Assembly: GCA_002269645.1 (NCBI GenBank)
Contig: NIVC01000040.1
Location: forward strand, 558,001-622,000
Source of the DNA: Macrostomum lignano
Taxonomy: Eukaryota
Direction: 5' to 3'
DNA length: 64,000 nt
In this document: positions 23,092-49,669 of the stretch, piece by piece
Numbering within the stretch: the stretch's first letter is position 1
How the letters are laid out: every line of letters starts with the position of its first letter
Translations under genes and position numbers: made by a program
The notes under the pieces: model-generated
What the model was told of the DNA's origin: nothing
The model's database searches: none
Seen by the model: only the letters and a program-made list of their open reading frames with translations

Positions 23092-24629
23092 TCATTGATT
23101 ATGTGATGATGTAAAATGATTTTTCCTATCTCCGCAGTGTATTTTTCTAGGAAATCGGCCTTCAAAAAATTACACGATATTTGAGTGTAGCGTCGTGATA
23201 TATGTGCTAGTGGTCCTTGGCAGGTTTGTGTGAGCAGACTGCCGCTCATATCAAATCCTGATGATTGGCAATTAGAATTAATTAACGGTTCTGCTGGATT
23301 AACAATTTTTCCATTAGCGCCCAGTGCAGCCTTGTCAAGCCTCTGGACCTGGAAGCTTCTGGACAGGTGGTACCAGGTGATAATGTACATTATTGTTGAT
23401 CAAGCCGGGACAGCGGGCATCCTCCTTCAACGGGTGACATAAGAGGCAACCAATCGTAGCTTAGTGCCTAACTTACATTACATATTATTTATGAAGCATC
23501 AAATTCATTTAAGAAGGTAACAAAGATAAAATCAAAGATTTGTCGTCTGTATAAAAATTGAAATGAAATATTAATAAAATACGCGTTTGCAACGACTGTG
23601 CAATTGAGAGCCCCACACACGCGCGCACAGAGAAAAGTAACAATTTAATTAAATTTTATTTAAGTAACACAACGAGATTTTCAGCCAGCAGTGACAGTAC
23701 AAGTTTTAAATTTATTATTATGTTATTATTTAACAGTTAATTTATTACTATGGCAGAATTTTGATAGAAAATTGTTAGTATCGCCCTACAACATAAAGTT
23801 GTATTAATATACTATAAAATAAAGTTATAAACTTTACTTATTTGCATCTCAGTTGACATAATAATAAGAATTGACTGGCTGACTATGAGACAATATTAAT
23901 CAATAGCCTGATAAATAGACACACAACAGCGATATTTCAAACGGATATTCGTCGCTATGGTATATAGAAAAAGCAGCGCCTATACTAAATAACTACTAAT
24001 AGTAGCTACATCAACTACTAAATTAGCAGTTTTTTGCAGTCATTTTGTCAATATTAAAAAAACACACAGTCAGTTTTGATTTGCATTCGGTGCGGTTGAA
24101 ATAATAAGCATTACTGCTACATATTATTACTATTATATTTATATAGAGCAAAAAATAAATAAATATACAATAGTTACTGAAGTCAAATTATTTATTTATT
24201 TATTGCTTGGAAAAAAGGCATTGGTCTATTATTTGAGTGCGTGTGACAAGAAAGAAATGCACGATATAATTAATATGAATATGCATTAACCTTTTCGTTT
24301 TAGTTTCAACAGTACATGCAAATTCACAAACAAAGAACACAAGACAGATTACTTAGTTGTAAGTAGTACAGTTGGAATTGCTGTCAAAAATAATTACAAG
24401 ACAAAATTTAAATTATTAGCCGACGAAATGGACGAGGGAAGGAACAAAATTTTAACAAAATTACATAAAGATAATTATTCAATTAATTGCTTGAATTCCA
24501 TTTTCGAAAGTAAAATGGGCTGCACTTGTCGCCACACTTCTGATAATTAATTACCAACTTTATGACGATACTTGGTTTATGATTTCTATTATAACTGAAA
24601 TGTACATAAACTCTACCCCTCATATCTTA

Positions 24630-25105
24630 GAACTGGAACCAATGTACATTGCCTCTATCCCCATAGCTTAGAACTGGAACCAATGTACATTGCCTCTTCT
24701 ATCCCTATAGCTTAGAACTTGGGCCAATGTACATTAACTATCTATCCCCATAGCTACAACTGGAACCAATGTACATTGCCTCTCTATCCCCATAGTTTAG
24801 AACTGGAACCAATGTACATACCTCTCTATCCCCATAGCTTAGAACTGGAACCAATGTACATTGCCTCTCTATCCCCATAGTTTAGAACTGGAACCAATGT
24901 ACATTGCCTCTCTATCCCTATAGCTACAACTGGACCCAATGTACATTGCCTCTCTATCCCTATAGCTACAACTGGACCCAATGTACATTGCCTCTCTATC
25001 CCTATAGCTACAACTGGACCCAATGTACATTACCTCTCTTTCCCAATAGCTTAGAACTGGAACCAATTTACATTGCCTCTCTATCCCCATAGCTACAACT
25101 GGAAC
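24630..25105. repeat. 42-43-bp minisatellite with AATGTACATT core
   Basis: AACTGGAACCAATGTACATTGCCTCTCTATCCCCATAGCTTAG, about 11 units, just past the BAZ1B stop. Confidence 0.95.
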
Positions 25106-25220
25106 CCGTCATTGTTCATTAAGTCTTGATATATACCACAAAAAATTAAAGTACATAAGCCCTATACCCTTAAGTGCCTACTAATAATATTTAGAACCTA
25201 TTACAACGTAAACTTCGCAA

Positions 25221-28200
25221 TCAAATATAGAAGCTACGCCTCGGATACCGGCCAATCAAATCGTGCTGATTCAACAATTTCGCCAGCTGCTGCTCCAGCC
25301 GGAGAGCGCAGTTCAATTCCTCGCTATTAGCCGGATTATACTCGGTAGCGTTGCCGAATAGCAGGGCAAAATCCGACATCATCTGATCGGCATTGGCGTA
25401 GCCGCCGCGTTGCTGACGCTTGCGCATGTCCAACAGGCAGATCGGCTTAGAGACAATCTGATAATAGTCGGGCGCATCCTTGGGATCGACAGGATCAACG
25501 AATGGCCAGGCGTCTTTGTGCCGATAGATTTTATCAAGCAGAGCTTTGCACAGCCTCTGCTGCTGCTCTTGCTGATCTGGCGCTAATCTGGCGCGCTTGC
25601 CGGGCGGCTGCTTGGCGCCGCCGCTGCTGTAGCGAACGCGCTTGCCGCGAACTTTCTCTTCTTCAGCCTCTTGTTCCAGTTGTTGGTCTTCGTCTTCACT
25701 ATCTGCCGCAGTTTTCGAAGATCGTTTCGAAATTTTCTGCTTTGAAGAAGCAGCAGCAGCAGAAGCGGAAGCAAGCGAATGACGACGATTGCTGACCGCC
25801 GGCTGTTGCTTCTTCGAGCCGCGCCGATTGCTTTCGGAAGCAACAGAAGAGGTTGACTTCCTGCCGCGCTTAGCCGGCGGAGCAGCGGCTCCAGACTTTT
25901 TGCTAGCTTTCTGCGTCTTCAAACCGGAAGATGTGGAAGATCGCTGCTTTGACCGCGACTTCGCCGCGACGGCTTCTTCCTCAGCATCGTCGCTCCCAGA
26001 CTCCTCTTCTTCATCTTCATCGTCTTGCTGGTCATCAACTTCCATGCCTTCATCGTCGCTGGAGTTGTCTGGCGCAGCTTCTTCTTCTTCGTCATCATCG
26101 TCTTCGAGCTCCTCCTCCTCTTCTGTTTCTTCGTTAGCCTCGTGCTCAGCCTCGTTCCCTTCATCTTCCTCATCGGCAGTCTCCGCCTCTTCTTCCTCAT
26201 CGTTGTCGAATTCGTCCTCGCTGAGGGCAGCTTTCTTCGACTGAAACGAAGTTTAATAGTGGGGTTAATGACAGTTTTATCCGTTTCTATCGCTGCAGAA
26301 ATCAATGTGCATTGCATTCTCTCTGACCTCCACTGCAGGAATCAATGTACATTCTCTCTACCCCCCACTGCTGGAATCAATGTACATTCTCTCTGACCTC
26401 CACTGCAGGAATCAATGTACATTCTCTCTACCCCCACTGCTGGAATCAATGTATATTCTCTCTACCCCCCAATGCAGGAATCAATGTACATTCTCTCTGA
26501 CCTCCACTGCAGGAATCAATGTACATTCTCTCTACCCCCACTGCTGGAATCAATGTACATTCTCTCTACCCCCAATGCAGGAATCAATGTACATTCTCTC
26601 TACCCCCCAATGCAGGAATCAATGTACATTCTCTCTACCCCTAATGTAGGAATCAATGTACATTCTCTCTGCCTCTTCACTGGAAGCAATTATGTACTCA
26701 ATCATTATCTTGGCAGCCTTCACTTACTCTGCTCTGAGGCGACCTCTTTCCATTGACCGCAGCAGATTTCTTAGCAGCTCCTCCAGCGGATCTAGGCCTG
26801 CCCCTTTTGCCGCTGCCACCGTTTATGCCGGCATTTTTAGAAACAGATTTACGGCCCTTTCGACAGACAGCACAACGAAATGCCGACCTAGTATTAGACC
26901 GCAGCGGCGGCTCGTGACAGCCTGCATGGTAGTTCGAGCGGCACTGCACGCACTGGATCAGCGGGGCCCCGGCGTGGGCGGAATGATCGCACACCTGACA
27001 GCAGGCCCGCTCGTCGTCGTCAGCTCCCATCCCGTCGTCGTCTTCGTCATTGTCAGCATCGTCGTCGACGTCATCTTCGTCGTAGAAGCGTCTAGATCGA
27101 CGCTCTCGCCTACGAGATGTCGAGGACTTTTTGCTACCAGTGGAGCTAGCGGCGCCGGCAGGAGCGCAGGCTAGGCAGTACCAATCCCCGGTTGGCCGCT
27201 CAGTCAGGCGCGGTCGCAAACAGTCTGGATGAAATGCTCGATTACATTTTTCGCATAGCAACAAATTTGGCGGATCGCGTCTAACCCGGCAGACTTGGCA
27301 TTTGGCATTGGCGGTGCTTTTGTCCCAGTTGACGCTGCTGTCTAACACGGACAGTAGGAAGTTTAGGCGGCCCCAGGTGGTGCAAGCAGACACGCTGGCC
27401 CGCCACTGCTCACAGAATTCCGGATCTTTGAATGCGCCGTAGCGGAACCGATCGAGCACGTGTTTTTCAACCTGGGGGTAAATACGGGTGGAGAATAGGC
27501 ATCAGATTAAGTGATGGTCTACAAAAAGAAAACACAATGGAGGCGCCAATAGCCAATCAGAGAAGGGCAAGATAAGGCAATGGGGCTAGCAGCTAATCAG
27601 AGAAGAACAAGATAAGGCAATGGGGCTAGCAGCCAATCAGAGAAGGGCAAGATAAGGCAATGGGGCTAGCAGCTAATCAGAGAAGAACAAGATAAAGCAA
27701 TGAGGCTAGCAGCCAATCAGAGAAAGGCAAGATAAAGCAATGAGGCTAGCAGCTAATCAGAGAAGAACAAGATAAAGCAATGAGGCTAGCAGCCAATCAG
27801 AGAAGGGCAAGATAAGGCAGTGAGGCTAGCAGCCAATCAGAGAAGAACAAGATAAGGCAATGGGGCTAGCAGCCAATCAGAGAAGGGCAAGATAAAGCAA
27901 TGAGGCTAGCAGCCAATCAGAGAAGCGCAAACAGTAGCTCACCAAAAGCATGCAGTTAGCCATCTGACTGATGCTAGCGGAATCGCACTGATCCAGCATT
28001 TTCTTTAGCTTAGCCGGATTCGGCACTCCGCCAAGTCCGCCCTGACTTAGTCCGGCCTCGGTTCTGGCCAACTCTTCAGCAAAGACAGAACGCAGATTAG
28101 CGATAGCCGATAAAGAATCGCCACTAGCGGTTGCTAGGGAAGCTTCCGTGGTCACCGCCGCTGAACGATGCTTAATCTCACGGCGTAGACGAGCAGAGAC

Positions 28201-30071
28201 GCGATCGACCTCTCGATGGAGAGCAGATTCACGAACTCCGGTTGGCAACAGGGAGGTCAGCAGCTCGTCCAGTTCAGTCTCAGAGTTCAACTGACGCCAA
28301 ACATTCGGAGCGGAGTCGTCCTCAGTTGGCCAGGTGAGCTCTTCGCAATCGTCTTCTTGAGCGCTGTCCGGCTTTGACGATGTCGATGGTTTGGCGTCGG
28401 TGTTCAATTTGGATGGCGATTGCTGTTGCTGCTTTCGCTGCTTGTCGGGCGACTTGCTGTAAAATGTTACCAGGGTAAAAAACATTGGTACTGATGGAGT
28501 ACTACTCAGGTTGATCTTCTAGGGGCGATTCTACAGGGGGTCTAGGGGCGATTCTAGAGGGGGTCTAGGGGCGATTCTAGAGGGGGGTCTAGGGGCGATT
28601 CTAGAGGGTCTAGGGGCGATTCTAGAGGGGGGTCTAGGGGATATTCTACAGGGGTCTAGGGGCGATTCTAGAGGGGGGTCTAGGGGCGATTCTAGGGGGT
28701 CTAGGGGCGATTCTAGAGGGGGGTCTAGGGGCGATTCTAGAGGGGGGTCTAGGGGCGATTCTAGGGGGTCTAGGGGCAATTTTAGGGGGTCTAGGGGCGA
28801 TTCTAGAGGGGCTCTAGGGGCGATTCTAGGGGGTCTAGGGGCGATTCTAGGGGGCTCTAGGGGCGATACTAGAGGGGCTCTAGGGGCGATACTAGAGGGG
28901 CTCTAGGGGCGATTCTAGAGAGGGGTCTAGGGGCGATTCTAGAGGAGAGTCTAGGGGCGATTCTAGCGGGGGGGTCTAGGGGCGATACTAGAGGGGGGTC
29001 TAGGGGCGATTCTAGGGGGTCCAGAGGCGATTCTAGGGGATCTAGAGGCGTTTCTAGGGGGGTCTAGGGGCGATTTTAGAGGATGGTCTAGGGTTGATTC
29101 TACAGGGGGTCTAGGGGCGATTCTACGGGGTCTAGGGGCGATTTTAGGGGGTCTAGGGGCGATTCTAGAGGGGGTTCTAGAGGCGATTCTAGGGGGTCTA
29201 AATGCGATTCTATAATTCTAGGGTTCTAGGAATTATACTATAACTAGGATACACAAGACGGGATCTTAGCAGACCAACACTCACCCGGACGAAGCTGGGA
29301 CAGCCTCATCCCCTGATGACCCGCCGGCGGCCCATCCGGTTTCAATCAGCAGCCGGCCAGGTGCGCACCGCAAATGCCAGTAGCGGGCATGGCCGCGATC
29401 TCGGCCAAGCGGCCGGACACGGGTAGCCGCCCGACTGTCCGACATGGCCCGCTCGTATTCGCGATCGGCCGCGGCGATGGCCGAATCTATGCGGGCCCAT
29501 TCGGTCTCCTGGGCCCGGCGCTGCCGCTCCGCCTTCTCTCGAACTTCCCGTTCGCGAGCCTGGCGGTTGTAAGTGATGCAACAGTGCAGGGGCTAAATAT
29601 TCAGGCAGAGAGACTGCTATACGGACGGCCAGGCATACGGGTAGATACGGGAGAGAATAGTAATGACAGACACAGGGACAGACACACAGACACCAAGACA
29701 GACACTAAGACAGACGCTAAGATAGACACGAAGACAGACACTAAGATAGACACTAAGACAGACAGACAGACACAGACAGACAGAAAAACAGACAGACAGA
29801 CAGACAGACACACAGACAGACATACACTAAAACAGACATACAGACAGAGACAGACAGAGACAGACAGAGACAGAGACACTAAAACAGACATACAGACAGA
29901 GACAGACAGAGAGACAGACAGACAGACGGACAGACAGACGGACAGACATACACTAAGACAGACAGACAAACAGACAGACAGACGGACAGACAGACAGACG
30001 GACAGACAGACAGACGGACAGACAGACAGACGGACAGACAGACATACACTAAGACAGACAGAAAAACAGAA

Positions 30072-30164
<93 letters not shown>

Positions 30165-30175
30165 CTAAGAGCCTA

Positions 30176-30216
<41 letters not shown>

Positions 30217-30325
30217 CTAAGAGTCTAAGACACACACACAGACAGACAGACAGACAGACAGACACTAAGACAGAGACAGAAAGACGGACAGACAGACATA
30301 CACTAAGACAGACAGACAGACAGAA

Positions 30326-30374
<49 letters not shown>

Positions 30375-30539
30375 CTAAGACAGACAGACACTAAGACAGA
30401 CAGACAGACAGACAGACAGACACTAAGAGTCTAAGACACACACACAGACAGACACTAAGACAGACACAGAAAGACGGACAGACAGACAGACGGACAGACA
30501 GACATACACTAAGACAGACAGACAGACAGACAGACAGAA

Positions 30540-30572
<33 letters not shown>

Positions 30573-30583
30573 CTAAGAGTCTA

Positions 30584-30664
<81 letters not shown>

Positions 30665-33600
30665 CTAAGAGTCTAAGACACACACACAGACAGACAGACA
30701 GACACTAAGACAGAGACAGAAAGACGGACAGACAGACAGACGGACAGACAGACATACACTAAGACAGACAGACAGACAGAAAGACAGACAGACAGACAGA
30801 CACAAAGAGTCTAAGACACACACACACAGACAGACAGACAGACACTAAGACAGAGACAGAAAGACGGACAGACAGACAGACGGACAGACAGACATACACT
30901 AAGACAGACAGACAGACACTAAGCCAGACAGACAGACAGACAGACAGACACACACACACACACAGACACACACACACAGACACACACACACAGACACACA
31001 CACAGACACACACACAGACAGAGACACCAAGAAAGACACTAAAACAGACACTAAAATAGACACCAAGACAGACACTAAGATAGACACTAATACAGACACT
31101 AAGATAGACACTAAGACAGACAGACAGACACAGACAGACAGACAGACAAACAGAAGAAGCAGTAGCGCACACCCACCTGCTCAGCCAGAGCAATCAGCCT
31201 GGAGGACATTTTAACCGACGCGGCCACGGGCGGTTTAGTGGAGTCGTCGCCGCCGCCAGCCTTCGACGTGGAGGCTCCAGTAGAAGTGGAGCCGTTGGCG
31301 GCGGCAGCCTGCGCTTTCTCAGTCTTCCGCTTTGCTTTCTCGAGTTTCAGTCGATCATTTTTAGCTTTAAGAGCGGCAACGCGCTTCTTGTGCGCCGCCG
31401 TGGCCCGCTGGACGCAATCATCGATGTAATCCGCGAGCACGTCGGATTTGAGCAGCTTCTCAGTGAGCTGCTCCAATACGGATAATTTGTCCTCGACAGA
31501 TAAATCCTGCAGTTCGAAGCGTTCCATTCGTTCTAATAGGCTGGCCAGTTCTGGGGTCAGCTTCTCGTCTTCGTCATCTTCTTTCTCGTCGTCGTTGTCG
31601 TCTTCGTCATCTTCGTCGCCGCCGTTGCGACGTCTGTCGTTGTCATCGTCGTTGTTGTCCGTGTTCTCAGCGTCCTCGTCATCGTCATCGCGCTTTCGCT
31701 TCTTGTCTCGACTTTTTTGCTTGCCGCTGTTGCTTGTGGAAGCGGCGCCGCCGTTAAGCGCTTTCTCGGCTGCGGCTGAAGATCGGGCAGAGGGTAGGCA
31801 GGGTAGGCAGGGTAGGGTGGGTTGCAGCGCTACTGTTCTTACTTTTTCGACTGTTAGACAGTAATGAGAGACTAGAAATGGATTGTTAACACCTGTTACG
31901 TATGGACTACTAACGCCTGCAAGACACGGACTACTAACACCTGTTAGACACGGACTACTAACACCTGTTAGACACGGACTACTAACACCTGTTAGACACG
32001 GACTACTAACACCTGTTAGACACGGACTACTAACACCTGTTAGACACGGACTACTAACACCTGTTAGACACGGACTACTAACACCTGTTGGACACGGACT
32101 ACTAACACCTGTTAGACACGGACTACTAACACCTGTTGGACACGGACTATTAACACCTGTTAGACACGGACTACTAACACCTGTTAGACACGGACTACTA
32201 ACACCTGTTAGACACGGACTACTAACACCTGTTGGACACGGACTATTAACACCTGCAAGACACGGACTACTAACACCTGTTAGACACAGACTATTAACAC
32301 CTGTTAGACACGGACTGCTAACACCTGTTAGACACGGACTACTAACACCTGTTAGACACGGACTACTAACACCTGTTAGACACGGACTACTAACACCTGT
32401 TAGACACGGACTACTAACACCTGTTGGACACGGACTATTAACACCTGTTAGACACGGACTACTAACACGTGTTAGACACAGACTATTAATACCTGTTAGA
32501 CACGGACTGCTAACACCTGTTAGACACGGACTACTAACACCTGTTAGACACGGACTACTAACACCTGTTAGACACGGACTACTAACACCTGTTAGACACG
32601 GACTACTAACACCTGTTAGACACGGACTACTAACACCTGTTGGACACGGACTATTAACACCTGTTAGACACGGACTACTAACACGTGTTAGACACAGACT
32701 ATTAACACCTGTTAGACACGGACTGCTAACACCTGTTAGACACGGACTACTAACACCTGTTAGACACGGACTACTAACACCTGTTAGACACGGACTACTA
32801 ACACGGTTAGACACTGACTACTAACACCTGTTAGACACGGACTACTAACACGGTTAGACACTGACTATTACTAACACCTGTTAGACACGAACTACTAACA
32901 CCTGTTAGACACAGACTATTAACCTCTGTTAGACAAGGACTACTATTAACACCTGTTAGACACGGACTACTAACACCTGTTAGACACGGACTACTAACAC
33001 TGGTTAAGACACTGGTTAAGCTACATTCACAAATCTATAATATTAGACATGAGTTTTATAGTGTACTATTAGATATAGAAATCCTACCTTCTTCGCTTCG
33101 CTTCCTCGGTGCAAGCAGCACCCTGGCCATCTCGGCGGCAGTATACTCGCTAACAGGCATATCAGTTAACAGCGTGCCAAGTTCTCTTCTACCGCCAGCA
33201 ATATTTTCATCTTGTAGCAGAGCTCTCAATAGCATAGTTAACAATTTGCTTAGATAAGCGTAGCCGCTAGGCTCCTTAGAAACCAGGGCTGCTAGGAGAT
33301 TATCAACCGACAATGGGATATTTTCATCGCCAACTGTAGCCACCACCCCAGCAACATCGTCGTTAGCAGAAGCGGCGACAGAGTTCGGGCCGCTAGCAAC
33401 CGACGGAGCCAGCAGAGGCCGGTAGGCGCACATGAATTCGGCCAGCATAGCAGCTCGGCCCAGCTCGCTAGGCGGAAAATCCGGCGGTAATTCAATCGGC
33501 TTAGCCGTTGGCAGGCTTTTGGTCTGGGCTGATAGCAGCAGGCTGTCTTCGAAGCGGCGCTTCTTGGCGTCTAGCGTCATCTGCGAGCGTTTGTGCGTGG

Positions 33601-36600
33601 GCGGGTTGTCAATATAACACGATATGTATTCGCTGCATATTTGACTTTGATGATATCCGCTTTAATATTTGTAGTTTAACTTATTATTTTATTGTCTATG
33701 GCTGTATCTCATTACTGGCCTATGGGGTATGGGATTAAACTGGCTATGGGATTCTAATTAGGGATGGGGATAACTAAACTGGCTATGGGATTCTAATTAG
33801 GGATGGGGATAACTAAACTGGCTACGGGATTCTAATTAGGGATGGGGATAACTAAACTGGCTACGGGATTCTAATTAGGGATGGGGATAACTAAACTGGC
33901 TATGGGATTCTAATTAGGGATGGGGATAACTAAACTGGCTATGGGATTCTAATTAGGGATGGGGATAACTAACTGGCTATGGGATTCTGATTAGGGATGG
34001 GGATAACTAAACTGGCTATGGGATTCTAATTAGGGATGGGGATAACTAAACTGGCTACGGGATTCTAATTAGGGATGGGGATAACTAAACTGGCTACGTG
34101 ATTCTAATTAGGGATGGGGATAACTAAACTGGCTATGGGATTCTAATTAGGGATGGGGATAACTAAACTGGCTATGGGATTCTAATTAGGGATGGGGATA
34201 ACTAACTGGCTATGGGATTCTGATTAGGGATGGGGATAACTAAAATGGCTATGGGATTCTAATTAGGGATGGGGATAACTAAACTGGCTATGGGATTCTA
34301 ATTAGGTATGGGGATAACTAAACTGGCTATGGGATTCTAATTTGGGATGGGGATAACTAAACTGGCTATGGGATTCTAATTTGGGATGGGGATAACTAAA
34401 CTGGCTATGGGATTCTAATTTGGGATGGGGATAACTAAACTGGCTACGGGATTCTAATTAGGGATGGGGATAACTAAACTGGCTATGGGATTCTAATTAG
34501 GGATGGGGATAACTAAACTGGCTATGGGATTCTAATTAGGGATGGGGATAACTAAACTGGCTATGGGATTCTAATTAGGGATGGTGATAACTAACTGGCT
34601 ATGGGATTCTAATTAGGGATGGGATAACTAAACTGGCTACGGGATTCTAATTAGGGATGGGGATAACTAAACTGGCTACGGGATTCTAATTAGGGATGGG
34701 GATAACTAAACTGGCTATGGGATTCTAATTAAATATGGGGATAACTAAACTGGCTATGGGATTCTAATTTGGGATGGGGATAACTAAACTGGCTACGGGA
34801 TTCGAAAGGGATGGGGATAACTAAACTGGCTATGGGATTCTAATTAAATATGGGGATAGCTAAACTGGCTTTGGGATTCTAATTAGGGATGGGGATAACT
34901 AAACTGGCTACGGGATTCTGGTTCAGTAGGGATATCTTAACTGGCTATGGGATTCTGGTTTAGTGGGAAGTTCTTATCTAGCTATGGGATTCTGGTTTAG
35001 TGGGAAGTTCTTATCTAGCTATGGGATTCTGGTTTAGTAGGGATATCTTAACTGGCTATGGGATTCTGGTTTAGTGGGAAGTTCTTATCTAGCTATGGGA
35101 TTCTGGTTCAGTAGGGATATCTTAACTGGCTATGGGATTTTTAATCCAACAATTAGGGATAGTTAAACTAGTTATGGGGACTATAAATGTACATAATAAA
35201 ATTTACATTTCTACAGAGCAGACGAATACAAAGACTCTAACCTTAGCTTTGAGCTTGGCCTCCTCTCGTTTAGCCTTCTTATACTCCTCACGCTGCTCCG
35301 GCGTCATGGCTTCAATGCGTTTCCTCTCGTTAAGCCTGGCCTGCACAGCTCGCAGGCGTTCCCGAACAGCCATCGGCAGTGCGGTGACCTGACGCTCAGT
35401 TAACACCTGGGCGCATTTATTAAGCAGCACTTTAATCATCTGTTCTGACCGTTCCATTTTAACTGCTCGAACTAGCTTTAATCCAATTGGTGGCAATTGT
35501 TGCAGAGCTCGACTACTTGGAGTTTTACTACCGGAAACCGTAGCGCCGCCTGACATCACTTTGAACGGCGATTTGCCCTGCAAAAAGAAATTGTTTTATA
35601 TTTACGTATAGGACTACTAATTTAGTTAGCTTAGTAGTCTGAGAGCATTATAAGTTAAGCAGACTTGGTTTGGGTTAGTAACTTAGTACACGCACACTTC
35701 GCCGACAGTGTTATAAGTTAAGCGAAGTCGGTTTGGGTTAGTACACAGTTTAATATGCCATAAATATATCTCAGAAAATATATGATACTACTACTTTTCA
35801 AGTCGATAAGTAGTGTAGTATAGTTGATCTCGCTTAGATACAACCCTACGAGTTGTGGTTCCTGACACAAATTTATACACACACAGAGAACAAGCAAAGC
35901 GCCTAACTGAGCTGACCTTCAAGTCGAACAGCGTCATTTGCTTCATCTTCTTGCCGCCGGCGCCAGCGGCGGCTGACGATCTGGCGGCGTCTTTGCGCTT
36001 CTTTGACGAACTAGCACCAGCCGTGTCGCCGTTAGCAATGGGAGCGGCATTGGCACCGCCGGATTTTCTCGCCACCGGCAAGCCGTCCAGTTTGCGTAAG
36101 GCGTCAATCTCAGATTCGACGCTATTTAGCATAACCTGATGCTTATCCAATACTAAATCGGCAATTTTCGGGCGCAATCGATATTTCTTAACTAAATCCT
36201 CGTCGACAATCCACGGGCCCGTGTTGTTGGAGCCGTAGCGCAGGGCGCTAGCCCGAATAAATAGACGAATATTCTCCTTTGACGGCATGCGTGTCTCGCG
36301 GCTAAAGAATTATTAAGACAGCACAAAAATATGACAATATTCTCTACTTGCCTACTGTAAGTAGATAAATTCGAAATTGAGGCGCATCACTTACACAATG
36401 GCTGAAGCTGGAACCCGAGAAATCACCTGGTGCTCGTCGTCGTCCAATTGAATTGCGTAGGTGAATGGCAACTAAAATAAGTTAAAGCAAGGAAATCCGT
36501 GTTTTAAGACTTAGTCGCAGTTGGCCAGATAAGATAACCGATATGTATCGTAGACAACTTTTTACACTACAATTAGCATGAGCGCGGATGAAAAATTCGA

Positions 36601-39600
36601 CTTAAATAAAAAACAAAACCGGTTTTGTCTTTGTATGGAGTCAATGGGATCCCAGTCAGAGGGAATCGCAATCAGTGGGAATCCCTAATCAAAGGGAATC
36701 AGCAGTCAATGGGAATCCCAGCCAGTGGGAATTCCAGTCAGTGGGAATCCCAATCAACGGGAATCCCAGTCAGTAAGGAATCCCAGTCGGTAAGGAATCC
36801 AAGTCAGTAAGAAATCCCAATTAGTGGGAATGCCGTCAGTGGGAATCCCCAGTCAATGGAAATCCCGTCAGTGGGAATCCCAATCAATGGGAATCCTCAG
36901 TCAGTGGAAATCCCGTCAGTGGGAATCCCAATCAATGGGAATCCCCAGTCAGTGGAAATCCCGTCAGTGGGAATCCCAATCAATGGGAATCCCCAGTCAG
37001 TAAGGAATCCCAGTCAGTAAGGAATCCCAGTCAGTAAGGAATCCTAGTCAGTAAGGAATCCCAGTCACTAAGGAATCCCAGTCAGTAAGGAATCCTAGTC
37101 AGTAAGGAATCCCAGTCAGTAAGGAATCCCAGTCAGTAAGGAATCCTAGTCAGTAAGGAATCCCAGTCAGTAAGGAATCCTAGTCAGTAAGGAATCCCAG
37201 TCAGTAAGGAATCCCAGTCAGTTGGAATTCATAGTCAGTGGAAATCCCCAGTCAGTGGAAATCCCCAGTCAGTGGAAATCCCCAGTCAGTGGAAATCCCG
37301 TCAGTGGGAATCCAAATCAATGGGAATCCCCAGTCAGTAAGGAATCCCAGTCAGTTGGAATTTATAGTCAGTGGAGTCCCCCGTCAGTGGAAATCCCCAG
37401 TCAGTGGAAATTCCGTCAGTGGGAATCCCAATCAATGGGAATCCCCAGTCAGTAAGGAATCCCAGTCAGTAAGGAATCCCATGGAATTTATAGTCAGTGG
37501 AGTCCCCCGTCAGTGGAAATCCCCAGTCAGTGGAAATCCCGTCAGTGGGAATCCCAATCAATGGGAATCCCCAGTCAGTGGAAATCCCCAGTCAGTGGAA
37601 ATCCCGTCAGTGGGAATCCCAATCAATGGGAATCCCCAGTCAGTGGAAATCCCCAGTCAGTGGAAATCCCCAGTCAGTGGAATCCCACTTGCACTCACCA
37701 GAGTAACCTTCTGCGGTGGACTTTTATTTTTATTCTCCTTATCTTGACCGGGCGATTCAGATTTCTTATCGGCTGATGTAGCGCCAACTGCAGAGGCGCC
37801 GGCTTCATCTTTAGCCGGAGAAGCAGTAGCAGAACCGCTGCAACCATTCTGGTTGCTATTAGAAGCAGTAGAAGCGTTAGCTGCCGCTGTGGCCGAAGTA
37901 TTAGAGGCAGATTCAGCGCCAGCAGACGAAGCGGATGGTGAAGTTGCCTGCGGTACCGCCGGCTCATCTTTGCGATAAATTGTACCTTTGATTCTGGTAA
38001 AAACAGGAAAAGCAAATAATAGGCGATATGTATCGAAAAACAACTTTCCAAAGCACGCAGCAACACACTTTATAGAGACTACAAAAAACAAAAACTTACA
38101 TTTTATCGCGAACTTTATTTTTTAGGCAAACCGGCTCGTCTAAGTAAAACTCTTGATGCAATTTGCGATAGACGCGGTTCACGGCGTTATCGATTGTGTC
38201 CGTGCCTGTCGTTTAGAGAGCGGGGTTGCTATTGAACTTGGACCGGCAACTGAGGATCTGGGAGGATGGTCCAGCAACTGAGGATCTGGGAGGCTGGCCC
38301 AGCAACTGACACTCTGGGAGGCTGGCCCAGCAACTGAGGATCTGGGAGGCTGGCCCAGCAACTGACACTCTGGGAGGCTGGCCCAGCAACTGAGGATCTG
38401 GGAGGCTGACCCAGCAACTGAGGATCTGGGAGACTGGCCCAGCAACTAAGGATCTGGGAGACTGGCCCAGCAACTGAGGATCTGGGAGGCTAGCCCAGCA
38501 ACTGACACTCTGGGAGGATGGCCCAGCAACTAAGGATCTGGGAGGCTGGCCCAGCAACTGACACTCTGGGAGGCTGGCCCAGCAACTGAGGATCTGGGAG
38601 GCTGGCCCAGCAACTGACACTCTGGGAGGCTGGCCCAGCAACTGAGGATCTGGGAGGCTGACCCAGCAACTGAGGATCTGGGAGACTGGCCCAGCAACTA
38701 AGGATCTGGGAGACTGGCCCAGCAACTGAGGATCTGGGAGGCTAGCCCAGCAACTGACACTCTGGGAGGCTGGCCCAGCAACTGAGGATCTGGGAGGCTG
38801 GCCCAGCAACTGAGGATCTGGGAGGCTGGCCCAGCAACTGACACTCTGGGAGGCTGGCCCAGCAACTGAGGATCTGGGAGGCTGGCCCAGCAACTGAGGA
38901 TCTGGGAGACTGGCCCAGAAACTGAGGATTTGGGAGGATGGATCAGCAACTGACGATCTGGGAGGCTGGCCCAGCAACTGGGGATCTGGGAGGATGGCCC
39001 AGCAACTGAGGAGCTGGGAGGCTGGCCCAGAAACTGAGGATCTGGGAAGCTGGCCCAGCAATTGAGGATCTGGGAGGCTGACCCAGCAATTGAGGATCTG
39101 GGAGGCTGGCCCAGCAACTGAGGATCTGGGAGACAGGCCCAGCAACTGAGGATCTGGGAGGCTGGCCCAGCAACTGGGGATCTGGGAGGCTGGCCCAGCA
39201 ACTGGGGATCTGGGAGACTGGCCCAGCAACTGAGGATCTGGTAGACTGGCCCAGCAACTGAGGATCTGGGAGGGCGGGTTTCCTGGCAGCCAATAAACAA
39301 GCCCAACTCACTGTGATGCACAATCTCCAAAGCAGCCTGAACATAGTACTTGGGGAACAGCTTCTTCAACAGTCTCTGGCAGGACTTCTCAGACTTGACA
39401 GCATCCTTATAACTGAGACAGCTGCGGCCAGTGCAACGGCAAGTCCAAATTGGCTCGGCATAGATTCGATTCTTTCGTTCCAATTCGCCGGCGCTGCTGC
39501 AAATCTCCTGGGTGATGTCCGCCACGAATTCGTGCTGCTGCTGGCCAGACTTAGTTGGAGAGTCCGGAGGCGGAGCAGTACTGGTCTGAGCTGTGCTGGG

Positions 39601-39663
39601 CCTCTTGCGTTCCTTTTTAACCAACTGATTAAGCACGTGCGGCCGCGAACCAAGTAGCGGCAT
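25221..39663 (-). CDS. BAZ1B: BAZ1B/WSTF-type bromodomain adjacent to zinc finger protein (WAC-DDT-WHIM-PHD-PHD-bromo), 12 exons (39663-39312, 38205-38100, 37993-37699, 36471-36395, 36301-35917, 35577-35242, 33580-33088, 31775-31177, 29559-29285, 28456-27943, 27471-26728, 26240-25221), 1731 aa
   Basis: WAC: MPLLGSRP...[13 protein letters not shown]...[20 protein letters not shown]. Segments I recall as WSTF-specific: [65 protein letters not shown]: [16 protein letters not shown]2: [15 protein letters not shown]: CQVC...[12 protein letters not shown]...WYCLAC. Bromodomain: AWPFVDPV...DYY...NATEYN. All 11 introns are GT-AG with matching phase (5196 nt in total). Confidence 0.9.
26300..26680. 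repeat. ~36-40-bp minisatellite with AATGTACATT core in BAZ1B last intron
   Basis: GCAGGAATCAATGTACATTCTCTCTACCCCCACT-like units. Confidence 0.92.
27551..27925. repeat. 40-bp minisatellite carrying AGCCAATCAG and AGATAA in each unit
   Basis: Ten units start at 27551+40n. Seven have CCAAT and three CTAAT, alternating at first as an 80-bp dimer. Nine carry AGATAA. Confidence 0.95.
28520..29215. repeat. ~20-23-bp minisatellite (TCTAGGGGCGATTCTAGAGGGGG)
   Basis: About 30 variable units; intronic. Confidence 0.92.
29660..31150. repeat. Compound (GACA)n/(CA)n microsatellite with CACTAAGA interruptions
   Basis: About 1.5 kb; recurring blocks CACTAAGAGTCTAAGACACACACAGACAG show re-duplication of larger units. 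Confidence 0.95.
31880..33010. repeat. 24-bp minisatellite (GTTAGACACGGACTACTAACACCT)
   Basis: About 45 units; source of the spurious 313-aa ORF and the N-terminal part of the 567-aa ORF. Confidence 0.97.
33735..35140. repeat. 39-bp minisatellite (AAACTGGCTATGGGATTCTAATTAGGGATGGGGATAACT) plus related terminal variant
   Basis: About 30 units followed from ~34920 by a derived GGGATTCTGGTTTAGTGGG variant. Confidence 0.95.
36640..37690. repeat. Variable 15-30-bp minisatellite (CAGTCAGTGGGAATCCC / CAGTAAGGAATCC)
   Basis: Mixed sub-arrays ending 8 nt from the donor at 37698. Confidence 0.92.
38250..39270. repeat. 28-bp minisatellite (GGAGGCTGGCCCAGCAACTGAGGATCTG), partly alternating as a 56-bp dimer
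   Basis: About 36 units in BAZ1B intron 1; AGGAT/ACACT variants alternate. Confidence 0.95.
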
Positions 39664-42600
39664 GGCTAAATTGATTGATCTAGATCGGCTCCAAAGCTGG
39701 CCCTTGTTTTGTCAATTAATTTCTATTTAATTTCTCTCTGTTGCCACTACCTTTTTGAGTTAATGTATAGTAAGTGAACTAAGCATGAAATTATCAGTTT
39801 ATTAGACCTCCACAAATTAATTGGCATTTTGATATCATTAGTAAAACAAAAATTATAAACTAGATACACTGTTTCTTAGAAATTATTAGATTAGACCAAA
39901 ATTTAGGATACATAATTTTCTTATATTGCTACAATAGAAAGGCATATTATTAAAAGTAGAATCAAATAAATTAAAGTATGCTCACTAGGCATTCTATGAA
40001 GTAGTAAAAGTTGCAAATATAAACCATTAATGAATTTTCATTAAAAAATAATGGAACTATGAAATATTTTTATAAGTAAAGACAGATTGCTAGATGAGTA
40101 GTTTCACAGATAGGTTAATCATGATACCAAAAATTATAAAGTTTATATTAGAGATGACAACATCAATACATGTGCAACCCCCCCCCCTGATTTACACTAG
40201 CTATGCAGCTTACTTTTTGACCAAAAAAGTGACCTACCTATGAAAGAAACCTAACTCCTAAAAAATAGTAATGTAATTTTGGGTAAATGGCAAGAGTAAC
40301 TAGAGTGCATTATTACTTCAGTAATAGTAATACTAGTAATACTAAATAATACTAAGTCTGGTTTTAGAGTGGGAACTTTTGTGACTTACCTTGGCTTGGC
40401 CTCTTGCCAGTTGGCCAGCTCAATCAGGTGTGGTGCATATATGGATGGCAAGGTAGTTCTTTTTTAACAGATGTATATTTTTAGTTTTTAATAAAGCTTT
40501 TGTAAAATTTTAAGTTTTTATGGAAATTTCAGATAATAGAGCTCTAATAGTTGTTTATATTTGAATAAATTATTTAATGCCAATTTTAAACAATATACCA
40601 GGTAGATATTGCACCAAAACTTTTTTCATTTTGCACTTTATTAAGTTAAAATTTGATTTTTATAAAATTATAAATATAAAAAGGCCATTAGTAGGATTCT
40701 TAAAAGTTAGCTATAAATATTATAGTTTTCTTACATCAAATACCTATGCCACCAAGTGCAATGCCACTATCACCTTTGCCATTGCTATTATTGCTGATTA
40801 AGCATTGTTAATATCAGGTGCCTATACAAAGAAGGTAAGATTGTATATACTAAACAAGTTCCTATAAGATTTATACTAACATAACTTCTAACAATCTTGT
40901 TTCCCTGATTAGGGTTTATAATTTCCTTGCTAAAAATACTAAAAATGGTCTTTTCCTTGGTAAAAGTATCTGTACATTTAAAATTTAGTTTTGTAACCTA
41001 TACTATATTATAAGGCATGCTAGTATAGCTATAGCTATGGGATCCTAGGGCAAATATGGTGAAATAGGTGCCTACGGCAATGTGCATTGCTATTTTGTTT
41101 TTTGGAGTTGTGATTTTTCGGGTTAATGATATTTTAGGTTTATGATGTGTGTTTCTATCAATTTCGAAGTTATGATATTTCAGGTTTATGATATTTTGGG
41201 TTAATGATAGAAAGTGCTTTTCAGAGTTGTGATTTTTTAGGTTTGTGATGCCCCCTAGTCCATGTACTGTAGCTGTAGCCATAAGTAAAACTATAGCTTA
41301 TTCCAATTCTCCATATTCTATAGCCATAAGGACCCCAATATTACTATATTCCCATAGTTCCTATAGCTATAGCTATATTTTAACAAAAAGTCTAGAAAAC
41401 AATATTTTGAATCAAAAAGATAACCTGGTGCCACTACAGCTATGGGAATCTATAGAAAATGATATCAACTACCATATTTCTGTAGTCGTAGCAGTAAGAG
41501 CAGCTAGCTATCAAAAGTTCTAGCAATGTTCAACACTATTTTGTTTTTTAGAGTTATGATATTTTGGGTTTGTGACATTTAGGGTTTATGATGGGCAATG
41601 CTATTTTGGTTTTTGGAGTTGTGATTTTTTGTGTTTATAATATTTAAATATTTCAATATTGTCAATCCTAATGTAAGTTACTGTGATAAATAATTTTATC
41701 TTTTAAGTTAAACTTAATACTATTTATTATTATATAATAGAAATACTTTATATTATATGTATATTTCCTATATATAAATTTGACATGACTGACAGTCATT
41801 TATTTGTTACTACATATAAATTATACAAATAAAAGCTTTTAGACAATTAATCATTAAGATTATTTTCCTTTTAACAATAGGCCTAGGCCTATTTAAGAAT
41901 TTAAAAACCAAAAAATTTCTGGTTGCATTGCAACTTCTATATATACAAATAGTCTGTAAAATTAGTTTAACAAATTTTGCAAAGATAAGTTTATAAAATA
42001 TAATAATAATAATGATATCAGTATTAAGCCTACCTAGCTATAATAATCTATATATTAAAGGAAATGCTTATCCCCATGGTCCTATGTCAATAATTCCAAT
42101 TTTATCTACATGGAACTGTGTTGATAATTTCCAGCTTATCCCCACAGCAACTTATTGAAATAGCTGCCACCATTCAAGTCTATAGGCCTGATAAACAGCC
42201 TAGGACTATGGGGATAAGCACTTCTTACTAGTGATATCTGAATATTCAGATTCGAAATCCAAATCTGAAAAAAGTCTCACTTTTTTAGAAATCCAAATGT
42301 TTTGGATTTGGAAATTTTATTTTCCAAATTTCCAAATATGCTTTCAAATATGAAAAAATCAAAAAACCAAAACAAAACTATGCAAACATAAAAGAAATAC
42401 AACTTTTTAAAAAAAGGTCAATTAAAAAAACAAGAACTCAAAATTTAATGTCATATTGTTCTTTGTTACAATTGTCTGCTTTTGCAGTAATGTATATTTT
42501 TTAAGTATTATTAAGCAAAGTTACTTAACTTTGGGACATTTGAGGCATTTAACCTAAAGTCGCAGAAACATGTTTAGGTAATCACTGTTTAAGTGTAATC

Positions 42601-44389
42601 TTTACTTTGTTTTTTAAAAATGCAAATGCAATGGACTTTATGTGCACTGTACATGGTAAAGTTATCAAATTGCACAAATATATAGTATTAGTAATTGGAA
42701 TTAGTTAAATTAGATACAAAAGAATTAAGTTCAATTCAATTCAGATACTTGATAGATATAGTATAAGCCCGAGCTAAATTAAATCTTGTCAGTAAATTAA
42801 TGTACAATACTAATATGATTACTAATTAGATGAAAAGGGATTTTTGTCACTAAAAGGTGTCATAGTTACTTCTACCATTTACCTTTTACTTTTTTTACAT
42901 TTGGAAACAAATTTGGATATTCAGATTTGGATTTATAATTTTTTGTACATTCAGATTTGGTTTCAGAAACTTTAAAAAATCTACATTTGGTCCATCAAGT
43001 GCTACTTCCTACATTAAATGCTAAATAATTAATTAAATTGCTTTCACTTCTACTTGTACTACTAGGCTATACCTTCTTGCTGGATTGACTCTTCTAATAG
43101 TTTATTGCCAGACCATCTATCACCAAAACATCTGTCACTGGATTATCTTGTCACCAGATTGACTAGATAGGCCCAGGGCCTACCTAATATAGTATAGGAG
43201 GCCTATAGGCCTAGGCATTATTATTTTCCATTACACTGGGTACACTGGGTACACTGGAAAGCTTGAAAATAATCATCTTAGAGCAAGATAGTTCAGAAAT
43301 CATTGAAAAAAAATAATTTAACGAACGAAACTTGAAGATTGCCTAATAATATAATATAATACTTTAAGATATAATTAAATTTTAACTTAGATTGCATTGT
43401 TATCATATTCTAATGGGGTTATACCTAGCTTAAAATTGGCTAAAAATTACCATAGATATGATTTGTTAGTCTTGACTATCCTAGACTTATTGAATAGGCC
43501 TCTAAACTTGATAAGCAAAGGCTTACCGCTTACCTTAAATCTAAAGAAAAGTTAAATTTCTACAACTAAAGGCATGCTAGTTTTTAAGATAAATCAGCTG
43601 CAAATTGTGTCAATAGCCATGCAATTCTAATCGCTAAGCAACCCGCAAGTTTCATAAAAAAAGTGAAATGCTGTCAATGGATTGGAATCAAGTTATGTGC
43701 ATTTACTACAAATTAAGTTAATACAATTGTATGCAGAACATATTGCACTGCAGAACGATAAGTAATACTGAATAAAAAGATTAAACAGCCATTTAAATTA
43801 TTCACTGTGGAAGAAAAAGTGACAAATATTAAGGAAAATACTCAAACTAAAAGATTCGCGAAAAAATATTTCAATGCTACCCAGACCATTTTTGGACATA
43901 AAACTAAAGTGAGCTTACAACTGACTGACTCATACGTCGAGAATAAAGTAAGGGAAGCAAAAAAACTAACAGAGGTTACGTTAAACTAGACTTTTCACAA
44001 TTTAAAAGACTTACTCACTCATCGAGCTTAAGAAAAATGGAGGTAGGGGATACTGATTTTAAAGAGGTCCCCAACGGCTGAAAACACATTGATCTGTTCA
44101 GTAGGTTTAAATTGCAAAGTTGTGATGTATAACAAAGCTTTTAAATCAAATTACAATTCTAGCCCTATAAATTTCTCAGAACGCAGTTATTGGCATTGAT
44201 CAATGTAGTTAACTTATTATTAATTTTTTTGCTTTTTCTATTTTAAAAAGTTAGCCTCAGTTAATTTTTAAAGTAAGCTGGATTCGCGTGCTCAGTAAAA
44301 TTAATTAGCTTTTAAGGCTTGAGCCTTAAATTGGATGTAAAATACTTTCAAAATTTTAACATTTTACTACTTTTTACATTGCTCAACGC

Positions 44390-44634
44390 GAAAGTGCGGG
44401 CAGAATAGCTTAACATTTTAGGGAAAACCAAATTGGTGGCACACTTACTCAGAATTCTAAATCATCATAATAGAAATTAAAATAATAGTGTTCAAAATAG
44501 TTCGGAACAACCAAGACTTTAATGAGGGGAGCCAGGGGCTTCGCCACCGGGAGGACAGCGGGGACTTGTCTATTGCTTGTCAATTGACGGCCGTTGTGGA
44601 AATCAATAATTTTGCTTTTAGGGCAAACAAAATC
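44390..44634 (+). repeat. 245-bp direct repeat, copy 1
   Basis: Matches 50673-50917 with one visible mismatch (AGAATTCTAA vs AGAATTTTAA). Contains the left end of a hAT-like element at 44533. Confidence 0.93.
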
Positions 44635-45240
44635 CTATATACTAAAAATGGTCTGTCTGTGTCTATGTGATCGATTAGAGAAAAAATGGCTGGACCGATT
44701 TTGTTCGAACTTGCACTGTTCAATCAGAAATTTTCCCGTGACTGTACATGCATCGTGGCTAAGAAATTGCTCGATGCTAAAGGCATTAAATATTCGAAAA
44801 ACATGCTTTTTTGCAAAGGTCAAGCAAACTTTTCGACTTGAAATGCATTGTAAGAATGCTAGAGAAAAAACTGACTGGTTGAATTCTGATTCTGAAATAG
44901 ATTGCATCATAACTGAATTGTAACTCCGACTTGAATTGAAAATGCAGTGTGGAAGCGTAGCACCAGACTTGATTTAAATTGCGTAACCATGCATATTGTT
45001 AACTGATACTGACTGACTGAGAAACTGATTATGTCATAACTGCTTCGTGTAATTTACTCTATGCTTGGATTTTCAAGTGTTGAATTATATAAGTGCAAAA
45101 TTTGATGTTATCAAAACGATGAGAGCTAGCCTAGAGGTGAACAAACTGAGCTGCTAAATGCAGCGACGATGGTTCGAATTTTCATAGAGTATAATTTTTT
45201 TAATTAAAGCTTTTCAACGTCAGGAAAACTAAAAGACTTT
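44633..45240 (+). mobile_element. Possible Helitron-like 5' end
   Basis: A|TC start followed by CTATATACTAAAAATGGTCTGTCTGTGTCT...GGCTGGACCGATTTT, resembling non-autonomous Helitron 5' termini. No canonical CTRR 3' end found. Confidence 0.35.
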
Positions 45241-45242
45241 TT

Positions 45243-49510: not shown

Positions 49511-49669
49511 CTAATGAAAGTGTCATTTAAAAAATTAAGAAGCATCATGGTAGAATAAAAGAAGCGTCATGTCAGACATGAAGGGTGTCATGTAAAAATT
49601 AAATGCAGCTATAATGCTGTGCTGGGGAGAAAAACTGAGACGTAAAGGCTCTCAGAGAATAACTGAGAT

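What the first reader, a model, noticed from the sequence alone, without database searches (positions are those of the whole stretch)
25221..39663. Apparent WSTF/BAZ1B orthologue in an invertebrate
WSTF is usually discussed as a vertebrate ISWI partner, and Drosophila has only the ACF1/BAZ1A type. This protein matches segments I recall as BAZ1B-specific: IWTC..TG...FP..Y....LE.VHH; P.KE.IR.FIR..ALR.G....PW.V...LVKKY; KMKQMTL.D; LPP..L.L...K; [11 protein letters not shown]; SRL.A....RERE. This implies the BAZ1A/BAZ1B split predates the protostome-deuterostome divergence and that a WICH-like complex exists in this lineage.
Basis: partly seen in the sequence, partly recalled or inferred. Interest (0 to 1): 0.75.

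Follow-up and report, generated by a model that had tools for sequence, protein, structure and literature searches.

The report
Flatworm BAZ1B (WSTF) chromatin-remodeller gene
The region holds an intact 12-exon gene of the flatworm Macrostomum lignano that is a true BAZ1B/WSTF-type partner protein of ISWI chromatin remodellers, but such invertebrate BAZ1B genes are already routinely annotated in public databases, so the finding is correct and ordinary.

Summary
Window 25221-39663 (minus strand) is exactly the coding span of a 12-exon, 1731-aa gene. All splice sites are GT/AG. The protein has a WAC domain, DDT/WSD-WHIM motifs, two PHD fingers and a bromodomain.

The organism is the flatworm Macrostomum lignano. 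UniProt A0A1I8HAX9 matches residue for residue. A second genomic copy is 98% identical, with Ka/Ks 0.18.

In a 130-sequence bootstrapped tree the protein groups with vertebrate BAZ1B, excluding every BAZ1A/Acf1 and choanoflagellate sequence, in 100% of replicates in four analyses. It scores 923 bits on a BAZ1B profile built without flatworms and 447 bits on a BAZ1A profile.

Both clades contain protostomes, deuterostomes and the sponge Sycon, whereas the choanoflagellate sequences sampled form a single group outside both clades.

The biology is right but not new. RefSeq and UniProt already name BAZ1B(-like) proteins in amphioxus, Ciona, starfish, crayfish, nemertean, molluscs, priapulid, sponge and parasitic flatworms.

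ISWI binding and tyrosine-kinase activity are inferred, not shown. No separate BAZ1A gene was found for M. lignano, but that search was not exhaustive.

The parts
39312..39663 (-). Exon 1 (aa 1-117): start ATG at 39663; N-terminal half of the WAC domain (WAC starts about 39528)
   Evidence: donor CACA|GTGAGT; Pfam WAC 46-143
38100..38205 (-). Exon 2 (aa 118-152): C-terminal part of the WAC domain (to about 38129)
   Evidence: acceptor ...CGACAG|, donor |GTAAGT; 99% identical in the second copy
37699..37993 (-). Exon 3 (aa 153-251): low-complexity Ser/Ala-rich linker
36395..36471 (-). Exon 4, 77-nt mini-exon (aa 252-276, [26 protein letters not shown]): start of the 'C-motif'/downWAC-like block
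   Evidence: Missed in my first model. Found from P0001/P0002 and located. It restores the reading phase and is 100% identical in the second copy.
35917..36301 (-). Exon 5 (aa 277-405): [11 protein letters not shown]...[12 protein letters not shown] block and the KMKQMTLFD motif
35242..35577 (-). Exon 6 (aa 406-517): LPPIGLKL... and MTPEQREEY coiled region
33088..33580 (-). Exon 7 (aa 518-681): DDT-like region ([19 protein letters not shown] ... LLRALLQDE)
   Evidence: Pfam DDT is below threshold here, and also in fish BAZ1B.
31177..31775 (-). Exon 8 (aa 682-881): acidic tract, WHIM1-like helix ([13 protein letters not shown]), SRLIALAEQ
   Evidence: P0002's model skips 137 aa of this exon
29285..29559 (-). 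Exon 9 (aa 882-972): AREREV..., [12 protein letters not shown] motif (start of WSD)
27943..28456 (-). Exon 10 (aa 973-1144): rest of WSD (GVRESAL), GGLGGVP motif
26728..27471 (-). Exon 11 (aa 1145-1392): WHIM2/WAKZ motif, PHD finger 1 (27166-27300) and PHD finger 2 (26863-27000)
   Evidence: both fingers have complete C4HC3 ligand sets
25221..26240 (-). Exon 12 (aa 1393-1731 plus stop): acidic/basic tail and bromodomain (about 25305-25550)
   Evidence: PDYY and the acetyl-lysine-anchoring Asn of the ...EYN motif are present; that these are the acetyl-lysine contacts rests on general bromodomain knowledge.

Best explanation
This is the Macrostomum lignano orthologue of BAZ1B (WSTF), one of at least two near-identical copies in this genome. 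SHOWN: it is an intact, selectively constrained gene. Its architecture is WAC, DDT-like region, WHIM/WSD motifs, two PHD fingers and a bromodomain. Its sequence belongs to the BAZ1B clade and not to the BAZ1A/Acf1 clade. INFERRED from what is established for BAZ1 proteins in vertebrates, flies and yeast: it is the non-catalytic subunit of an ISWI-type nucleosome-sliding ATPase, that is, a WICH-like complex. In that model the WAC module contacts extranucleosomal DNA, the DDT/WHIM region binds the ISWI ATPase and helps set nucleosome spacing, and the PHD fingers and bromodomain read histone tails. The 'tyrosine-protein kinase' label carried by database relatives comes from one activity reported for the human WAC plus C-motif region. 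Both segments are present here, but the activity cannot be judged from sequence.
For: Gene model: 12 exons, all GT/AG, one stop. It is identical to UniProt A0A1I8HAX9 where they overlap, and the same structure reproduces P0001 exactly at the second locus. Constraint: exons are 96.5-100% identical between copies against about 80-94% for introns, exon indels are all multiples of 3, and Ka/Ks is 0.18. Domains; complete PHD ligand sets and bromodomain key residues. Orthology: the best named hits are invertebrate 'BAZ1B' at 378-457 bits against 165 bits for a BAZ1A. In the NJ tree of 130 sequences and 840 columns, the B clade has 82-100% support and Mlig plus fish BAZ1B excludes all A-type and choanoflagellate sequences in 100% of replicates in 4 analyses. 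Clade identities were fixed by source names. Profile scores are 923 (B, no flatworms), 447 (A) and 352 (choanoflagellate); deuterostome-only profiles give 715 against 263. At 13 diagnostic columns it has 8 B states and 1 A state.
Against: The trees are neighbour-joining on a fast MAFFT alignment, not maximum likelihood. Flatworms are long-branched. The protein has two PHD fingers whereas vertebrate BAZ1B has one; amphioxus and starfish B-type proteins also have two, so this looks ancestral. Pfam DDT and WHIM1 do not reach threshold, but DDT and WHIM1 also fail in fish BAZ1B. There is no expression, interaction or activity evidence.
Confidence: 0.9

Rival explanations
1. It is really a BAZ1A/Acf1 orthologue, and the BAZ1B resemblance is convergence or long-branch attraction.
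For: UniProt's automatic names call two trematode members of the same flatworm clade 'BAZ1A' (P0003; P0021). The two-PHD architecture is also that of fly Acf1.
Against: No bootstrap replicate places it with A-type sequences. It scores half as much on A profiles. Diagnostic columns are 8 B to 1 A. The B clade is not a long-branch assemblage, since it contains fish, hagfish, amphioxus, starfish and molluscs. Two PHD fingers also occur in amphioxus and starfish B-type proteins.
Confidence: 0.02
2. It is a single, undifferentiated BAZ1 gene (co-orthologue of both BAZ1A and BAZ1B) that merely retains ancestral B-like states.
For: No BAZ1A-type protein from any flatworm appeared among 120 listed BAZ1A hits. 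Choanoflagellates have a single BAZ1 with mixed states.
Against: It sits inside the B clade with other protostome B-type proteins, next to trematodes, not at the base with choanoflagellates. The sponge Sycon, the mussel Mytilus coruscus, amphioxus (Branchiostoma, two species sampled), hagfish and fish carry both types, so the duplication predates flatworms. A missing BAZ1A would then be a loss, not non-duplication.
Confidence: 0.04
3. It is a decaying duplicate (pseudogene), or a gene-prediction artefact joining unrelated exons across repeat-rich introns.
For: M. lignano is highly duplicated. Nine of the eleven introns carry tandem repeats, and repeat copy number differs between the two copies, whose genes span 14.4 kb and 11.8 kb.
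Against: The reading frame is uninterrupted across 5196 nt. Ka/Ks is 0.18 and indels are in frame. Domain order is collinear with orthologues along the whole length. An independent annotation gives the same structure.
Confidence: 0.03

Closest known systems
Vertebrate BAZ1B / WSTF (anchor used here: Pygocentrus nattereri XP_017557453.1, P0023; hagfish P0047)
   Same: Same clade. Same order of WAC, C-motif block, KMKQMTL motif, DDT-like LLQD helix, WSD/WHIM, PHD and bromodomain. Pfam DDT is sub-threshold in both.
   Different: Only about 27% identity in BLAST HSPs. The flatworm protein has a second PHD finger that vertebrate BAZ1B lacks, plus long lineage-specific Ser/Ala and acidic tracts. Kinase activity and WICH/B-WICH/WINAC partners are known only for vertebrates (PMC8536118).
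Invertebrate proteins already annotated BAZ1B(-like): Schistosoma japonicum (P0007), Clonorchis sinensis (P0189), Mytilus coruscus (P0004), Lymnaea (P0005), Liolophura (P0006), Priapulus (P0008), Procambarus (P0029), Asterias (P0027), Branchiostoma (P0024), Ciona (P0038), Tubulanus (P0020), Sycon (P0073)
   Same: Same orthology group. Two PHD fingers are seen in the eight B-type proteins examined: seven invertebrate proteins aligned plus amphioxus P0024 and starfish P0027 by Pfam. The nearest relatives are the trematode proteins, as sister group with 56-94% bootstrap.
   Different: The M. lignano entries themselves are labelled only 'hypothetical protein' or 'WAC domain-containing protein'. 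They are 28-33% identical to the others.
BAZ1A / Acf1 (Drosophila tropicalis XP_068152075.1, P0152; Pelobates BAZ1A, P0053; Batillaria, P0060)
   Same: Same superfamily and overall architecture. The WAC and adjacent block, WHIM motifs, PHD and bromodomain are alignable.
   Different: Separate clade with 82-100% support. A-type proteins give Pfam DDT and WHIM1 hits that the window protein does not. The window protein scores about half as much on A profiles.
Choanoflagellate single BAZ1 (Salpingoeca infusionum P0143, S. punica P0129; P0010)
   Same: WAC, DDT, WHIM, two PHD fingers and a bromodomain.
   Different: They fall outside both metazoan clades and carry mixed A/B diagnostic states. They serve as the outgroup that dates the duplication.

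Membership tests
BAZ1 / WAL family (WAC-containing ISWI accessory subunits) | N-terminal WAC domain | tested here: met
   Pfam PF10537, E 2.1e-18, residues 46-143, full-length match
BAZ1 / WAL family (WAC-containing ISWI accessory subunits) | DDT domain | tested here: inconclusive
   No Pfam PF02791 hit at E<0.01. The region aligns with the DDT helices of relatives, and fish BAZ1B also lacks a Pfam DDT hit.
BAZ1 / WAL family (WAC-containing ISWI accessory subunits) | WHIM/WSD motifs (LG.DR..RYW, G.RES, WAKZ block before the PHD) | tested here: met
   Pfam WSD PF15613, E 3.2e-15. Motifs are at residues 931, 1045 and 1175. Pfam WHIM1 itself is below threshold.
BAZ1 / WAL family (WAC-containing ISWI accessory subunits) | C-terminal PHD finger(s) followed by a bromodomain | tested here: met
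   Two complete C4HC3 fingers (1202-1246 and 1302-1347) and a bromodomain at E 9e-20
BAZ1B / WSTF orthology group | Groups with vertebrate BAZ1B to the exclusion of BAZ1A/Acf1 in a phylogeny | tested here: met
   100% of 200 replicates in each of 4 NJ analyses. B clade support is 82-100%. Clade identities come from source names.
BAZ1B / WSTF orthology group | Higher similarity to BAZ1B than to BAZ1A by profile and pairwise scores | tested here: met
   923 against 447 bits, and 715 against 263 bits with deuterostome-only profiles. BLAST sums are 322-459 for the full-length named B-type anchors against 147-282 for A-type; the 994-aa partial hagfish BAZ1B sums to 199, inside the A range. Diagnostic columns are 8:1.
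BAZ1B / WSTF orthology group | Forms a complex with the ISWI ATPase (WICH) | not testable with these tools
   Inferred only from the presence of the DDT/WHIM region
BAZ1B / WSTF orthology group | Mn-dependent tyrosine kinase activity of the WAC plus C-motif region (H2A.X Tyr142) | not testable with these tools
   Both segments are present (residues 46-143 and about 253-335). There is no canonical kinase fold to check (PMC8536118). I recall a kinase-dead Cys mutation from the original paper, but that paper was not held, so it was not tested.
BAZ1A / Acf1 orthology group | Groups with Drosophila Acf1 and vertebrate BAZ1A | tested here: not met
   Never recovered with the A clade; lower profile score

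The most novel reading that the evidence does not exclude
Flatworms, or at least M. lignano, may have kept only the BAZ1B paralogue and lost BAZ1A. That would be the mirror image of Drosophila, so this one protein would cover both ACF-like and WICH-like roles. No flatworm sequence appeared among 120 listed BAZ1A-type hits or among the named A-clade representatives, whereas five flatworm sequences sit in the B clade. The evidence also supports dating the BAZ1A/BAZ1B duplication to the metazoan stem: the sponge Sycon has both, and the choanoflagellate sequences sampled form one group outside both clades. I could not find that dating stated in the searchable literature.
Probability: 0.3. Interest if true: 0.35.

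Novelty: already known. Interest (0 to 1): 0.15.

Why it matters
It matters little beyond correct annotation. The M. lignano entries are currently labelled 'hypothetical protein' and 'WAC domain-containing protein', and they can be named BAZ1B-type. Two trematode relatives auto-named 'BAZ1A' by UniProt are probably misnamed. For chromatin biologists it is a reminder that WSTF/BAZ1B is an ancient metazoan gene that Drosophila apparently lacks, not a vertebrate invention. A regenerating flatworm with transgenesis and RNAi could be a non-vertebrate system for asking what BAZ1B does. None of this opens a long-standing question, and orthology databases and RefSeq naming already reflect it.

Tried and rejected
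(1) My first 11-exon model used a weak acceptor at 36294 to force the reading phase. It was rejected once the 77-nt mini-exon 36471-36395 was found.

(2) A block-only alignment (A1) given to the word-indexed protein search returned a single hit and wasted one search. Contiguous prefixes were accepted.

(3) A profile search of the N-terminal blocks against PDB sequences gave no hit. The full protein hits only bromodomain and PHD structures, so no solved-structure anchor exists for the WAC-DDT part.

(4) The first bootstrap run had a bug: saturated distances became NaN and support was capped at 62%. It was fixed and rerun.

(5) Literature searches for invertebrate or flatworm BAZ1B, or for a published A/B phylogeny across Metazoa, found nothing relevant. 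The BAZ1B review and the mouse Baz1a paper compare only vertebrates, fly, worm and yeast. The original WSTF kinase paper was not held.

(6) The search for an M. lignano BAZ1A with a gastropod BAZ1A query returned 156 hits, none from a flatworm among the 120 listed. This is a non-detection, not proof of absence.

(7) No Rfam families or tRNAs were found anywhere in the window.

(8) Structure prediction was not run, because it would not bear on the A-versus-B question.
Full report
WHAT IS THERE. The interval 25221-39663 is the coding span of one minus-strand, multi-exon eukaryotic gene. Stop-free segments in the three minus-strand frames carry all the pieces of a BAZ1-type protein, separated by repeat-filled introns. 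I placed the splice junctions by hand. A phase conflict between exons 3 and 4 was resolved when database relatives showed 26 extra residues. These map to a 77-nt mini-exon at 36471-36395 with perfect AG/GT borders.

The final model has 12 exons: 39663-39312, 38205-38100, 37993-37699, 36471-36395, 36301-35917, 35577-35242, 33580-33088, 31775-31177, 29559-29285, 28456-27943, 27471-26728 and 26240-25221. The CDS is 5196 nt and encodes 1731 aa with one terminal stop. Pfam finds WAC (46-143), WSD, two PHD fingers and a bromodomain in the canonical order. Both PHD fingers have complete C4HC3 ligand sets. The bromodomain keeps the PDYY and ...YN acetyl-lysine-pocket residues.

WHOSE GENE. The best database match is Macrostomum lignano. 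UniProt A0A1I8HAX9 (P0002) is identical at all 1594 of its residues and differs only by skipping 137 aa of exon 8. GenBank BOX15_Mlig019865g1 (P0001, 1737 aa) is a second copy with 34 substitutions and 8 gapped positions. It lies on contig NIVC01001014.1 of assembly GCA_002269645.1. Transferring my exon structure to that locus reproduces P0001 exactly, which is independent confirmation of the model.

Between the two copies, exons are 96.5-100% identical and every exon indel is a multiple of three. Introns are about 80-94% identical and differ in repeat copy number, so the genes span 14.4 kb and 11.8 kb. Ka/Ks is 0.18, from 57.5 synonymous and 34.5 non-synonymous differences. Both copies are therefore under purifying selection, and this is not a pseudogene.

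BAZ1A OR BAZ1B? After the M. lignano entries, the top hits to the full protein are invertebrate proteins that their sources already call 'tyrosine-protein kinase BAZ1B': Mytilus, Lymnaea, Liolophura, Schistosoma japonicum and Priapulus, at 378-457 bits. The first BAZ1A, from a fig wasp, scores 165 bits.

To test this properly I ran an exhaustive HMMER search of 1.84 billion cluster representatives, using a profile of N-terminal-to-WHIM2 prefixes. It found 470 proteins at E<=1e-30 and returned 150. I aligned the 136 sequences of at least 900 aa, kept 840 columns with at least 70% occupancy and 130 sequences with at least 60% coverage, and built neighbour-joining trees with 200 bootstraps. The tree has three groups: a B clade of 46 that includes the window protein, an A clade of 78, and a small group of 6.

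Cluster look-ups fixed their identities.
- The B clade holds fish and hagfish BAZ1B, plus amphioxus, Ciona, starfish, crayfish, amphipod, nemertean, rotifer, three nematodes, liver flukes and the sponge Sycon.
- The A clade holds frog BAZ1A, Drosophila BAZ1A (that is, Acf1), amphioxus, gastropod, Trichinella, Anisakis, a mite and Sycon.
- The small group is choanoflagellate (two Salpingoeca species).

Support for B against the rest is 82-100%, and for A against the rest 82-100%. The window protein groups with fish BAZ1B, excluding every A-type and choanoflagellate sequence, in 100% of replicates. This holds with Kimura or BLOSUM-based distances, on all 840 columns or on the 471 best-occupied ones. 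It is sister to the trematode proteins (56-94%).

Profile HMMs built without any flatworm agree: 923 bits on B, 447 on A and 352 on the choanoflagellate profile. Deuterostome-only profiles give 715 against 263. Of 13 columns where the two clades are each conserved but differ, the protein has the B state at 8 and the A state at 1.

AGE OF THE SPLIT. Both paralogues occur in the same species or genus for fish (Pygocentrus: P0023, P0217), hagfish (Myxine: P0047, P0107), amphioxus (P0024, P0044), the mussel Mytilus coruscus (P0004, P0296) and the sponge Sycon ciliatum (P0073, P0083). The choanoflagellate sequences sampled form one group outside both clades. This rests on NJ trees. A maximum-likelihood analysis with more non-bilaterians is the proper confirmation.

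ARCHITECTURE. Vertebrate BAZ1B and BAZ1A each have one PHD finger. Amphioxus A and B, starfish B, fly Acf1, choanoflagellates and the window protein have two. Two fingers is thus the ancestral state, not evidence for Acf1 affinity. Pfam DDT and WHIM1 fall below threshold in the window protein, but the same is true of fish BAZ1B for DDT and WHIM1, and the region aligns.

HOW IT LIKELY WORKS. By homology it is the accessory subunit of an ISWI ATPase. WAC binds linker DNA, DDT/WHIM binds ISWI and acts as a spacing ruler, and the PHD fingers and bromodomain bind histone tails (family knowledge summarised in PMC8536118). This is inference, because no interaction or expression data were available. 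The 'tyrosine kinase' name derives from an activity reported for the human WAC domain plus C-motif (residues 206-345). Both segments are present here, but with no canonical kinase fold nothing more can be said from sequence.

IS THERE ALSO A BAZ1A IN M. LIGNANO? A word-indexed search with a gastropod BAZ1A, stripped of low-complexity tracts, returned 156 BAZ1A-type proteins from vertebrates, molluscs, a brachiopod and arthropods. None of the 120 listed came from a flatworm. That is suggestive of loss but not conclusive. A tblastn against the assembly is needed.

NOVELTY. The biology is right but already embedded in public annotation. RefSeq and UniProt name BAZ1B(-like) proteins in at least ten invertebrate phyla, including flatworms. 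I found no paper that discusses this: the reviews compare only vertebrates, fly, worm and yeast. Small by-products: the M. lignano entries deserve the BAZ1B name, and two trematode relatives auto-named 'BAZ1A' by UniProt belong to the B clade.

LIMITS. The trees are distance-based and built on a fast alignment. The representative set was chosen with a B-biased profile. Many representatives are unnamed. There is no transcript evidence.

Noticed in passing
window 24611-39273 (introns and flanks of the gene): Nine of the eleven introns, and the 3' flank, carry their own distinct minisatellite. Periods are 42 (24611-25106), 35 (26315-26670), 40 (27551-27930), 24 (28518-29212), GACA x about 376 (29665-31154), 24 (31887-33012), 39 (33736-34956), 74/111 (34892-35139), 17/48 (36639-37687) and 28 (38239-39273). 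These arrays create long spurious ORFs on both strands. They account for the size difference from the second gene copy (14.4 kb against 11.8 kb).
   Followed up: partly
L001 (GCA_002269645.1, NIVC01001014.1:61659-79477): A second, 98%-identical copy of the whole gene exists in the M. lignano assembly, with the same 12 exons. Ks is 0.049 and Ka/Ks is 0.18. This is consistent with the recent genome duplication reported for this species, which I state from memory and did not check.
   Followed up: yes
window 6904-8932, minus strand: A DnaJ subfamily-A type chaperone gene in at least three exons: J domain (8594-8932, Pfam DnaJ E 3e-27), CXXCXGXG zinc-finger domain (7533-8039) and DnaJ_C (6904-7557).
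   Followed up: partly
window 2485-3931, minus strand: Exons of a bHLH(-zip)-like transcription factor (VERRRRDKINTLINQLAEMMP...; Pfam HLH E 6e-9), preceded by a Gln/Ser-rich exon.
   Followed up: partly
window 19232-20537, minus strand: A CUT-domain exon (RVLGLSQGTVSELLSKPKPW; Pfam CUT E 1e-14) of a Cux/Onecut/SATB-type homeobox gene, flanked by tandem repeats.
   Followed up: partly
window about 58000-62200, plus strand: A degraded non-LTR retrotransposon: endonuclease-like and reverse-transcriptase (YADDLVLL; Pfam RVT_1 E 4e-6, below gathering score) segments broken across reading frames.
   Followed up: partly
window 40000-50000: A very AT-rich stretch (GC 0.28-0.35, against 0.42-0.56 over the gene) immediately upstream of the gene's start, with no convincing ORFs.
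   Followed up: no
P0003 (Calicophoron daubneyi), P0021 (Opisthorchis felineus): UniProt's automatic names call these trematode proteins 'BAZ1A', but they fall in the BAZ1B clade with the window protein. Clonorchis and S. japonicum relatives are named BAZ1B. This is a probable misnaming.
   Followed up: yes
window 52285-53100 and 53862-54287, plus strand: Two longer stop-free segments (272 and 142 aa) without Pfam hits. They may be exons of an uncharacterised gene, or chance ORFs.
   Followed up: partly
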